Notes: generated by a model from the sequence alone, not told the origin. 63,910 nucleotides of DNA, filler included, from Octopus bimaculoides (GCF_001194135.2; 5 parts of 4 records of this genome joined end to end with filler, not necessarily neighbours in it); one strand, 5' to 3'. Counted from the whole stretch's first letter, positions 62,848 to 63,910 are shown. Program-made: numbers and translations.

Positions 62848-63910
62848 TCATCGATATACAACGCAGCAGCAATAAACACATCATACGACATAGACTCATC
62901 GACTTACGGCACACCTGAATATGAAATATCAAGATATGAAACTTCAACGTATGATATATCAACTTACGAATCATCAATATACGACATCACCCCGTACAAA
63001 ACGTCGACTGACTCTTTACTGTATGACATACTGACACATACAACGACGTACGAAGCACCAACATATGACATTGCAACATACGAAACATCAATATACAACC
63101 TATCAACGTACAACATAACGTACAACGTATCAACATACAATACATCAACAACATATGATGAGTCAACATATGACCACAAATGGATATATGGTATATCAAC
63201 ATATGATATCCCAATATATGATACAAGATATGACACATCAACGTACGACACGTCAACATATTACACATCAACAGATGCAATAATACAGTCCTCAACATAC
63301 AACACATCCATATACGATATATCAGCAGCATATAACATAACAACAAACACCTCAAAGTACGACTCCTCAATATATGATACTTCAACGTATGGCACATCAA
63401 AATATGACACATACCCTTACGATTCATCAACATACCACTCATCAACTTACGACACATCAACGAAANNNNNNNNNNTTACGATTCATCAACATACCACTCA
63501 TCAACTTACGACACATCAACGAAAGATCTATTTTATTACGTAGTGTCAGAATATGGCACCTCAACAGAGACATCAACATACGATCCATTGATAGAATCGT
63601 CAACATACAACANNNNNNNNNNACAGAGACATCAACATACGATCCATTGATAGAATCGTCAACATACAACACCTCAACAACATACAACATAACAACAAAC
63701 ACGTCAACATACGATTACTCAACATACGCAACATCAACTTACGGCACATCAGCATACGATACACTCCCTTACGATACATCAACACACCATGTAGCAACCT
63801 ATGGCACACCAGCGTACAACATATTCGCCGACGATGTATCACCGTATTACACATCAGCAGAGACATCAACATACGAAACGTTGCCACAATCATCTACATA
63901 CAACTCGTCA
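62848..63910 (+). CDS. Partial exon encoding a Tyr/Thr/Ser/Asp-rich (YDTST)n pentapeptide-repeat protein, open at both ends
   Basis: Frame starting at 62848 gives 206 stop-free codons (SSIYNAAAINTSYDIDSSTYGTPEYEISRYETSTYDISTYESS...). After removing two 49-nt gap-flanking overlaps it is 945 nt (315 codons) with no stop. Tyr, Thr and Ser codons vary at synonymous positions and unit-length changes are multiples of 3. Confidence 0.8.

What the first reader, a model, noticed from the sequence alone, without database searches (positions are those of the whole stretch)
62848..63910. Hidden 315-codon exon encoding a tyrosine-periodic (YDTST)n protein
Seen: a plus-strand frame with no Met (hence absent from the ORF track), no Cys and no stop. 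It has 55 Tyr in 315 aa, mostly at 5-residue spacing (consensus Y-[DNEG]-[TIS]-S-T). TAY and TCA codons are one change from a stop, yet none is a stop despite heavy unit divergence. Synonymous codons vary and unit-length changes preserve frame, which argues for purifying selection. I do not recognise the family: it is not reflectin-like (no Met/Arg motifs) or suckerin-like (no Gly/Ala/His blocks). Inference: a lineage-specific structural, adhesive or matrix protein, possibly forming a beta-solenoid or amyloid-like Tyr ladder or a substrate for Tyr modification and cross-linking.
Basis: partly seen in the sequence, partly recalled or inferred. Interest (0 to 1): 0.9.

Follow-up and report, generated by a model that had tools for sequence, protein, structure and literature searches.

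The report
Tyrosine-periodic acidic repeat protein fragment
This 1-kb piece is wholly a diverged 15-base tandem repeat that looks like part of a real gene for a very acidic, serine/threonine-rich protein with a tyrosine every fifth residue. It has no known relatives, and its organism, gene ends and expression could not be established.

Summary
Each N gap is flanked by an exact 49-nt duplicate, as left by unmerged assembler overlaps. Collapsing both gives 945 nt: 315 codons, no stop, 55 Tyr, with 27 of 54 Tyr spacings exactly 5.

The open frame is more than a by-product of the repeat:
- The 15-nt register shifts at least 9 times, always by a multiple of 3.
- Neutral simulation expects about 10 stops in this frame; 0 are seen. 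The other two plus-strand frames carry 11 and 16.
- TAN codons never end in a purine (0/55, against 19/65 at other NAN codons).
- Between copies of an ~80-codon higher-order repeat, dN/dS is 0.42 (p=0.005) in this frame only.

So it is most likely a coding minisatellite. The product is acidic (pI ~4, net charge −32) and 39% Ser+Thr, with only 7 Lys/Arg and 12 N-glycosylation sequons. It is predicted disordered (AF2 pLDDT 31).

Nothing matched in Pfam, NCBIfam, PDB, Rfam, the two very large protein collections, or the viral, metagenome, prokaryote, phage and plasmid DNA sets.

Not shown: organism (the cephalopod idea is untested), exon borders, signal peptide, transcription and copy number. The beta-solenoid idea got no support.

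A secreted mucin-like or matrix protein with Tyr as cross-linking residues is my best inference. Moderate interest.

The parts
62848..63465 (+). Segment 1 of the open frame: 206 codons, with the first codon at 62848. It holds higher-order copies H1 (62848-63099), H2 (63100-63288) and the start of H3 (from 63289).
63417..63524 (.). Gap 1 (N at 63466-63475) flanked by an exact 49-nt duplicate (63417-63465 = 63476-63524). This is most likely an unmerged assembler overlap; collapsing it keeps the frame.
63476..63612 (+). Segment 2 of the open frame: 45 codons, read from 63477. The new sequence is 63525-63612, which holds the end of H3 (to 63596) and the start of H4 (63597-63612).
63564..63671 (.). 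Gap 2 (N at 63613-63622) flanked by an exact 49-nt duplicate (63564-63612 = 63623-63671). Collapsing it keeps the frame.
   Evidence: family D3
63623..63910 (+). Segment 3 of the open frame: 96 codons, read from 63623. The new sequence is 63672-63910, which holds the rest of H4 (63672-63889) and the start of a fifth higher-order copy (63890-63910). It is cut by the piece's edge.
62848..63910 (+). Diverged 15-nt tandem repeat, consensus TAC GAC ACA TCA ACA (Y-D-T-S-T). Units are about 25% diverged from the consensus. They are nested in an ~80-codon (~246-nt) higher-order repeat. The array fills the whole piece and runs off both ends.
62987..63893 (-). Decoy antisense frame (Leu/Met/Cys/Arg-rich). 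It has only 2 stops in the merged sequence and a 262-codon ATG-started ORF. The N gaps break it into the ORFs that the ORF listing reports. Its dN/dS is 0.97, so it is not the coding frame.

Best explanation
The piece is an internal fragment of a protein-coding tandem-repeat domain, a 'coding minisatellite'. A 15-nt unit encoding Y-[D/N/E/G]-[T/I/S]-S-T is nested in an ~80-residue higher-order repeat. It has been kept open and in frame by purifying selection on the plus strand. The product is a low-complexity, probably disordered, strongly acidic polypeptide (pI ~4, net charge about -32 per 315 aa). It is 39% Ser+Thr and 17.5% Tyr, with no Cys or Met and almost no Lys/Arg. Twelve of its 14 Asn lie in N-x-S/T sequons.

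The steps from here on are inferred, not shown. It is the repeat domain of a secreted, heavily glycosylated and/or phosphorylated mucin-like or matrix protein. The hydrated acidic Ser/Thr spacers keep the chain extended. The evenly spaced Tyr residues, nearly all followed by D/N/E/G, act as the interaction or cross-linking points, through pi-stacking, dityrosine/DOPA chemistry, or possibly sulfation.

What is shown: the frame, the periodicity, indels only in multiples of 3, stop avoidance, and dN/dS < 1. What is inferred: secretion, modification, cross-linking, and the organism.
For: Frame preservation:
- The frame-agnostic anchor TCAAC occurs 24 times, always in the same phase mod 3, while its mod-15 register changes 9 times (6>0>12>0>3>0>9>6>3>0). 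TAYGA occurs 27/27 times in phase.
- Autocorrelation peaks at 15/30/45 and at 12/27/42, with minima at 14 and 16.
- The consensus unit has no special self-similarity at offset 3 that would favour 3-nt slippage.

Stop avoidance:
- Neutral mutation of a consensus array to the observed ~24% divergence expects 10, 9, 7, 37, 11 and 6 stops in the six frames. Observed: 0, 11, 16, 46, 12, 2.
- Adding only 13% divergence to the real sequence gives a mean of 6.4 stops, with P(0) = 7e-4.
- TAN codons end in a purine 0/55 times, against 19/65 for [GAC]AN (p = 4e-6). TNA has a purine at position 2 in 0/44 cases, against 16/106 (p = 0.003).

Selection:
- Higher-order copies H3 and H4 align with a single 15-nt gap even under codon-blind DNA alignment.
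- For that pair pS = 0.40, pN = 0.21 and dN/dS = 0.42 (Fisher p = 0.005) in frame +0. The other five frames give 0.60-0.97, none significant.
- All six higher-order pairs give pN/pS of 0.41-0.60 in frame +0.

Contrast case: a similar 15-nt array in a snail genome, upstream of a real gene, shifts register by -2, -1 and -1, which are not multiples of 3.

Protein properties. Disorder: AF2 pLDDT 31.
Against: - The piece has no start, stop, splice site, signal peptide or non-repeat flank; it is 100% repeat.
- No related protein turned up. That covers the piece's own ORF and any near-identical transcript-derived one, in the 5.8-billion-cluster and 1.84-billion-representative collections. The best hit was 52 bits, and all hits were low-complexity look-alikes.
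- Substitutions between H3 and H4 are only mildly skewed by codon position (21/13/26).
- NG86 does not correct for transition bias or CpG effects.
- The alignments for five of the six higher-order pairs were made at protein level in frame 0, which biases pN downward.
- An antisense frame is also nearly open (2 stops), which shows that this composition tolerates open frames.
- A similar 15-nt array in Bulinus is non-coding but was annotated as protein.
- Selection signatures would persist for a while in a recently dead gene.
- The function rests on composition alone.
Confidence: 0.6

Rival explanations
1. It is a non-coding 15-bp minisatellite or satellite. The open Tyr-periodic frame is only a by-product of a stop-free repeat unit, and no protein is made.
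For: The whole piece is repeat and both ends are cut inside it. The assembler broke twice on 49-nt repeats. Five of the six frames of the consensus unit are stop-free, and an antisense frame has only 2 stops. No homologue or self-hit appeared in the huge protein collections. A closely similar unit (ACATACRACACCATG) forms a clearly non-coding array in Bulinus truncatus, which a gene predictor read as a Y-N-T-M-T 'protein'. That array even has one completely stop-free frame over 240 codons.
Against: This array is old: units are ~25% diverged from the consensus. Yet all 9 or more register shifts are multiples of 3, which is at most about 5e-5 if indel sizes were unconstrained. It has 0 stops where about 10 are expected. 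Purines are absent only where they would create a stop. dN/dS is significantly below 1 in one frame only. The Bulinus array is young and homogeneous, and it still shows three indels that are not multiples of 3.
Confidence: 0.2
2. It is a relic of a formerly coding repeat domain, either a recent pseudogene or an unexpressed duplicated fragment. It still carries past selection signatures but is no longer under selection.
For: Selection tests on paralogous repeat copies integrate over the past. They cannot show present function. The piece is an isolated 1-kb contig with no gene context. No annotated or predicted protein like it exists in the collections searched.
Against: The frame has not one stop or frameshift in 945 nt, although 128 of 315 codons are one step from a stop. 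Even 13% extra neutral divergence is expected to add about 6 stops. Any loss of function would therefore have to be very recent.
Confidence: 0.12
3. One reading: the pentapeptide period builds a regular beta-solenoid or amyloid-like stack with a Tyr ladder. This would resemble pentapeptide-repeat proteins or ice-binding / ice-nucleation solenoids.
For: The period is a strict 5 residues. It is rich in beta-formers (Thr, Ile, Tyr, Val). A D/N position follows Tyr, which recalls the A(D/N)LXX register.
Against: No match to any pentapeptide-repeat or other Pfam model even at E <= 10, and no PDB sequence relative. AlphaFold2 gave pLDDT 31, pTM 0.13 and no secondary structure, though it often recognises solenoid repeats even from a single sequence. 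The net charge of -32 and the frequent unit-length changes (4-, 6- and 9-residue spacings in half the intervals) would break a regular solenoid register.
Confidence: 0.06
4. The gene is on the minus strand: the Leu/Met/Cys/Arg-rich frame with a 262-codon ATG-started ORF.
For: It has only 2 stops in 315 codons and many ATG codons. It is the kind of ORF that ORF finders list.
Against: dN/dS is 0.97 in that frame. It contains stops. No protein like it was found in the 5.8-billion-cluster collection. Its low stop count is only mildly below the neutral expectation (2 against 6, p ~0.05), and constraint on the plus frame would explain that.
Confidence: 0.02

Closest known systems
Mucin-type Ser/Thr-rich tandem-repeat (PTS/VNTR) domains and other coding minisatellites, such as yeast and Candida cell-wall adhesin repeats (PMC2566889)
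   Same: A long array of short repeat units whose length is a multiple of 3. About 40% Ser+Thr. No Cys inside the array. Nested higher-order repeats. Fast divergence with the frame preserved. Predicted disorder. Difficult for short-read assemblers.
   Different: Pro is only 3%, whereas PTS domains are Pro-rich. Tyr is 17.5% and strictly periodic. The chain is strongly acidic. No flanking domains or signal peptide are available to confirm secretion.
Tyr-periodic cross-linkable or 'sticker-spacer' low-complexity proteins: resilin, mussel and sandcastle-worm adhesive proteins (Ser/Tyr-rich Pc3), and the FUS-type [G/S]Y[G/S] domain (from my own knowledge)
   Same: Regularly spaced Tyr sit in a hydrophilic, disordered Ser/Thr-rich background. 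In those proteins Tyr supplies dityrosine/DOPA cross-links or pi-stacking contacts.
   Different: Those proteins are Gly/Pro/Gln- or Lys-rich. This one has almost no Gly, Pro, Gln or Lys and is Asp/Thr-rich instead. No sequence similarity was detected.
Pentapeptide-repeat proteins (A(D/N)LXX, Pfam PF00805 clan)
   Same: Five-residue period with D/N at a fixed position next to a hydrophobic or aromatic residue.
   Different: No HMM match. No beta-helix was predicted. A bulky Tyr sits where a small residue is required. The register is broken in half of the units.
Acidic Ser-rich biomineral matrix proteins, such as dentin phosphophoryn (DSS)n and molluscan acidic shell-matrix proteins (from my own knowledge)
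   Same: A highly acidic, Ser/Thr-rich, repetitive, disordered chain. It has many [ST]-x-x-[DE] sites (26) that resemble acidophilic kinase sites.
   Different: The period is 5, not 3. Tyr-rich. Asp is only 8.6%. No sequence relation.
The 15-bp minisatellite upstream of the Bulinus truncatus 'Gigasin-3a' gene (KAH9502412.1; L003 2925-3645)
   Same: The unit ACATACRACACCATG shares 10 of 15 positions with this unit at the best rotation. It reads as Y-[DN]-T-M-T in one frame. It was retrieved as a protein-level hit.
   Different: The snail array is young and homogeneous, lies directly before the real first exon, and has indels that are not multiples of 3 (-2, -1, -1). It was found because it was searched for, so the resemblance is not evidence of common origin.

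Membership tests
Coding minisatellite (protein-coding tandem repeat) | Unit length is a multiple of 3 and one frame is open through the whole array | tested here: met
   15-nt unit. 315 codons with 0 stops after the overlaps are collapsed, and each segment is open on its own.
Coding minisatellite (protein-coding tandem repeat) | Length variants between units keep the frame (indels only in multiples of 3) | tested here: met
   At least 9 register shifts, all multiples of 3. Anchors are 24/24 and 27/27 in phase. Autocorrelation peaks at 12 and 15 with minima at 14 and 16.
Coding minisatellite (protein-coding tandem repeat) | Purifying selection in that frame (dN/dS < 1, stop avoidance) | tested here: met
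   dN/dS 0.42, p = 0.005, in frame +0 only. 0 stops against about 10 expected. 0/55 purines at the third position of TAN codons.
Coding minisatellite (protein-coding tandem repeat) | Transcribed and translated as part of a gene with a start, a stop and flanking exons | not testable with these tools
   The piece is cut inside the repeat at both ends. No transcriptome or eukaryotic genome collection was available.
Mucin-type PTS domain | Ser+Thr around 40% or more, with abundant Pro | tested here: not met
   Ser+Thr is 39%, but Pro is only 10 of 315 residues.
Mucin-type PTS domain | Signal peptide and flanking globular (VWD/CK/SEA) domains; O-glycosylation | not testable with these tools
   No flanks are present in the piece.
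Pentapeptide-repeat family (PF00805 clan) | Match to the A(D/N)LXX profile | tested here: not met
   Pfam hmmscan returned no family at E <= 10.
Pentapeptide-repeat family (PF00805 clan) | Right-handed quadrilateral beta-helix fold | tested here: inconclusive
   The AF2 single-sequence model had pLDDT 31 and no secondary structure. A model without an alignment is weak evidence.
   0 Met, 2 Arg, 6 Gly, 5 His in 315 aa. No Pfam match.
Dispersed non-coding satellite | High genomic copy number at many loci | not testable with these tools
   The source genome and reads are unavailable. There were no DNA matches in the viral, metagenome, prokaryote, phage or plasmid collections.

The most novel reading that the evidence does not exclude
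This is the first glimpse of an undescribed family of secreted, extremely acidic proteins with tyrosine at every fifth residue, (Y-[D/N]-T-S-T)n nested in ~80-residue super-repeats. They would form an extracellular material such as a cross-linked gel, coacervate, adhesive or mineral-associated matrix through evenly spaced, modifiable Tyr. That design has no counterpart among known Gly/Pro/Lys-based Tyr-rich biomaterial proteins.
Probability: 0.2. Interest if true: 0.65.

Novelty: new variant of a known kind. Interest (0 to 1): 0.4.

Why it matters
If it is expressed, this is an orphan repeat protein with an unusual design: periodic Tyr in an acidic Thr/Ser background, without Gly, Pro, Lys or Cys. 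That could be a new biomaterial or matrix motif.

It would also be invisible to standard pipelines, for four reasons:
- There is no ATG in the fragment.
- A decoy antisense ORF exists.
- Short-read assembly broke on it.
- With only 7 Lys/Arg in 315 residues, tryptic proteomics would miss it.

It is also a worked example of how to tell a coding minisatellite from a look-alike non-coding one. The useful tests were indels in multiples of 3, stop avoidance, and frame-specific dN/dS between higher-order copies. If it is not expressed, it is an ordinary minisatellite.

Tried and rejected
1. Family and structure look-ups on the 315-aa product all returned nothing: Pfam, NCBIfam and PDB sequence search. 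Rfam on both strands also returned nothing.

2. The search for homologous proteins on the product: 6925 word-sharing candidates, none at E <= 1e-3.

3. Exhaustive phmmer of the first 206 aa against 1.84 billion representatives: 6 hits, best 52 bits. All are unrelated low-complexity pentapeptide arrays. They include a bacterial GY[DN]xN repeat, a fungal FDTST repeat, a snail YNTMT array and an SRH[DG]x insert in a dCMP deaminase. I rejected them as homologues.

4. Searching the antisense 262-aa ORF, on the idea that gene callers would have called that frame on related DNA: nothing.

5. A degenerate DNA pattern for YDTSTYDTST in viral, metagenome and prokaryotic genome contigs. This gave 0, 1 and 1 hits. 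I read the metagenome hit (L001): it is a PPTT repeat in another frame. I did not examine the Streptomyces hit (L002), but a single match in a high-GC genome is most likely chance.

6. blastn against phages and plasmids: no match.

7. Literature searches for the motif strings and for Tyr-rich / Thr-rich pentapeptide repeats, including in cephalopods: nothing relevant.

8. AlphaFold2 single sequence: no confident structure, so no fold search was run.

9. I considered whether 3-nt slippage is intrinsically favoured by the unit. Its self-similarity at offset 3 is no higher than at offsets 5, 7, 8 or 10.

10. I considered CpG decay as the source of the 'synonymous' variation. CpG o/e is 1.59, so there is no depletion.

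11. The expected gain was low.

Full report
**1. The gaps**

The piece (62848-63910) has three sequenced segments: 62848-63465, 63476-63612 and 63623-63910. They are separated by two runs of 10 N.
- In both cases the last 49 nt before the gap are identical to the first 49 nt after it: 63417-63465 = 63476-63524, and 63564-63612 = 63623-63671 (seen independently, families D1 and D3).
- Two exact 49-nt end overlaps look like neighbouring de Bruijn-graph contigs that a scaffolder linked but did not merge (inference). The real gap would then be negative.
- Read literally through the 10 N, the open frame sits in window phases 0, 2 and 1 in the three segments. The sequence as written is therefore not in frame.
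- With both overlaps collapsed, the sequence is 945 nt and a single frame runs through all of it.
- Each segment is also stop-free on its own in the frame that reads the same motif (206, 45 and 96 codons), so the finding does not depend on the merge.
- Caveat: a branch at a 49-mer means the repeat graph has other paths. The number of units at the two joins is not known.

**2. The observation**

The merged frame has 315 codons, with no stop, no Met and no Cys.
- Composition: 55 Tyr, 70 Thr, 53 Ser, 27 Asp, 24 Ile.
- Tyr-to-Tyr spacing is exactly 5 in 27 of 54 intervals. Residue shuffles give a mean of 4.4 and a maximum of 13.
- At DNA level it is a 15-nt tandem repeat with consensus TAC GAC ACA TCA ACA. 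Full-length units differ from that consensus by 25% on average.
- In 2000 dinucleotide-preserving shuffles, no frame on either strand had fewer than 4 stops.

**3. Is the open frame only a by-product of the repeat?**

This is the real question. Five of the six frames of the consensus unit lack stops, and an antisense frame has only 2 stops. Four tests separate frame +0 from the rest.

(a) Indels.
- The anchor TCAAC was searched without regard to frame. It occurs 24 times, always in the same phase mod 3, while its register mod 15 changes nine times (6>0>12>0>3>0>9>6>3>0). TAYGA is 27/27 in phase.
- Autocorrelation peaks at 15, 30 and 45 and at 12, 27 and 42. It has minima at 14 and 16.
- The unit has no extra self-similarity at offset 3 that would favour 3-nt slippage.
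- Nine shifts that are all multiples of 3 have a probability of about 5e-5, even on the generous assumption that one third of neutral indels are multiples of 3.

(b) Stops.
- I mutated a perfect consensus array to 24% divergence, using the substitution spectrum observed between repeat copies. This gives on average 10, 9, 7, 37, 11 and 6 stops in the six frames. Observed: 0, 11, 16, 46, 12 and 2.
- Adding only 13% divergence to the real sequence creates a mean of 6.4 stops in frame +0. Zero stops occurred in 7e-4 of runs.

(c) Where purines are missing.
- TAN codons end in a purine 0 of 55 times. GAN, AAN and CAN codons do so 19 of 65 times (p = 4e-6).
- TNA codons have A or G in the middle 0 of 44 times, against 16 of 106 for other NNA codons (p = 0.003).
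- 128 of the 315 codons are one change from a stop.

(d) Frame-specific dN/dS.
- The array has a higher-order period of about 246 nt. There are four higher-order copies, each beginning [S/L]S[T/I]YN: aa 1-84, 85-147, 148-230 and 231-308. A fifth starts at aa 309.
- The two best-preserved copies, H3 and H4, align with a single 15-nt gap even under codon-blind DNA alignment.
- For that pair Nei-Gojobori gives pS = 0.40, pN = 0.21 and dN/dS = 0.42 (Fisher p = 0.005) in frame +0.
- The same aligned DNA read in the other five frames gives 0.60-0.97, none significant. The nearly open antisense frame gives 0.97.
- All six higher-order pairs give pN/pS of 0.41-0.60 in frame +0. Five of those alignments were made on the frame-0 protein, so they lean that way.

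Weak points: codon-position skew is modest (21/13/26 differences), NG86 ignores transition and CpG bias, and selection inferred from paralogous copies describes the past.

**4. A contrast case found along the way**

One of the six weak protein hits was 'Gigasin-3a' of the snail Bulinus truncatus, KAH9502412.1.
- Its first ~165 residues (Y-[DN]-T-M-T repeats) come from a 15-nt minisatellite, ACATACRACACCATG. This lies directly upstream of the first non-repeat exon (L003 2925-3645).
- That array is young and homogeneous. It has one completely stop-free frame. Even so, its three register shifts are -2, -1 and -1, none a multiple of 3.
- It shows what a non-coding array of almost the same unit looks like, and that predictors can mis-read one as protein.
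- The present array behaves differently: it is much older and has only indels in multiples of 3.
- The 10/15 unit similarity is a consequence of having searched for it. It is not evidence of relatedness.

**5. What the product would be**

- pI 4.05; net charge about -32.
- GRAVY -0.73.
- Ser+Thr 39%, Tyr 17.5%, Pro 3%.
- Only 7 Lys+Arg.
- 12 of 14 Asn lie in N-x-S/T sequons.
- Tyr is followed by D/N/E/G in 44 of 55 cases and preceded by Thr in 28.
- There are 26 [ST]-x-x-[DE] sites.
- AlphaFold2 without an alignment gives pLDDT 31, pTM 0.13 and no secondary structure.

The most economical reading is a disordered, extended, heavily modified acidic repeat domain of an extracellular protein. Periodic Tyr would act as the interaction or cross-linking residue. 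This is an inference from composition, by analogy with mucin PTS domains, resilin, and Ser/Tyr-rich cement proteins. No tool result here shows it. The beta-solenoid / Tyr-ladder proposal received no support, and the unit length departs from 5 in half of the intervals.

**6. Relatives**

None were found.
- Pfam, NCBIfam, PDB and Rfam returned nothing.
- The word-indexed 5.8-billion-cluster search returned nothing.
- The exhaustive 1.84-billion-representative phmmer search returned only low-complexity look-alikes of at most 52 bits.
- The antisense ORF search returned nothing.
- The degenerate DNA pattern gave no hit in viral contigs and one each in metagenome and prokaryote genome contigs. The metagenome hit, read in full, is a PPTT repeat in another frame. 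The Streptomyces hit was not examined and is most likely chance too.
- Phage and plasmid blastn gave no match.
- Literature searches for the motif found nothing.

The piece itself gives no clue to the organism. The cephalopod assignment cannot be checked, and no eukaryotic genome or transcriptome collection was available. The lack of any near-identical predicted protein is mild evidence against annotation or expression. It is not decisive, because the fragment has no ATG and such repeats assemble badly.

**7. Verdict**

It is most likely a fragment of a coding minisatellite under purifying selection. I put that at about 0.6, or about 0.7 if a recently inactivated copy is included. It encodes a new Tyr-periodic, acidic, Ser/Thr-rich low-complexity repeat with no known family.

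It belongs to a known kind of thing, the tandem-repeat, mucin-like or structural low-complexity domain, with an unusual composition. The specific functional ideas remain untested. Interest is moderate, because everything that would make it important still has to be shown: expression, secretion, material role and lineage.

Noticed in passing
window 63417-63524 and 63564-63671: Both 10-N gaps are flanked by exact 49-nt duplicates, so they look like unmerged assembler overlaps (negative gaps) rather than missing sequence. The source assembly probably has many such pseudo-gaps in repeats.
   Followed up: yes
window 62848-63910 (higher-order copies start at 62848, 63100, 63289, 63597 and 63890): The 15-nt units are nested in a higher-order repeat of about 246 nt (62-85 codons). 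Each copy starts [S/L]S[T/I]YN. Three of the four copies (H2, H3, H4) end in a less repetitive stretch such as ...TSTDAIIQ or ...ETSTY[DE]xLx.
   Followed up: yes
L003 2925-3645 (Bulinus truncatus JAGDYQ010000081.1, gene for KAH9502412.1 'Gigasin-3a'): The N-terminal ~165 residues of this annotated snail protein come from a homogeneous 15-nt minisatellite (ACATACRACACCATG) just upstream of the first non-repeat exon. Its register shifts are -2, -1 and -1. This is probably a gene-model artefact in which the start codon was picked inside a non-coding repeat.
   Followed up: partly
window 62987-63893, minus strand: An antisense Leu/Met/Cys/Arg-rich frame has only 2 stops, and a 262-codon ATG-started ORF in the merged sequence. 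ORF finders list its pieces instead of the plus-strand frame. Its dN/dS is 0.97, so it is a decoy.
   Followed up: yes
window 62848-63910: Strand composition is strongly skewed (A 41%, C 27%, T 22%, G 11%) and CpG o/e is 1.59. CpG is not depleted, despite frequent TAC-GAC and ACG-TAC junctions.
   Followed up: partly
proteins P0004, P0005 and P0002: Other unrelated 5-residue-period arrays turned up. One is (VYDVS)n in a short ORF on an ENA metagenome contig. One is an (SRH[DG]x)n insert inside a JGI metagenome deoxycytidylate deaminase. One is (FDTST)n at the N-terminus of a Saccharata proteae hypothetical protein. Fifteen-nt coding or pseudo-coding minisatellites are evidently widespread.
   Followed up: no
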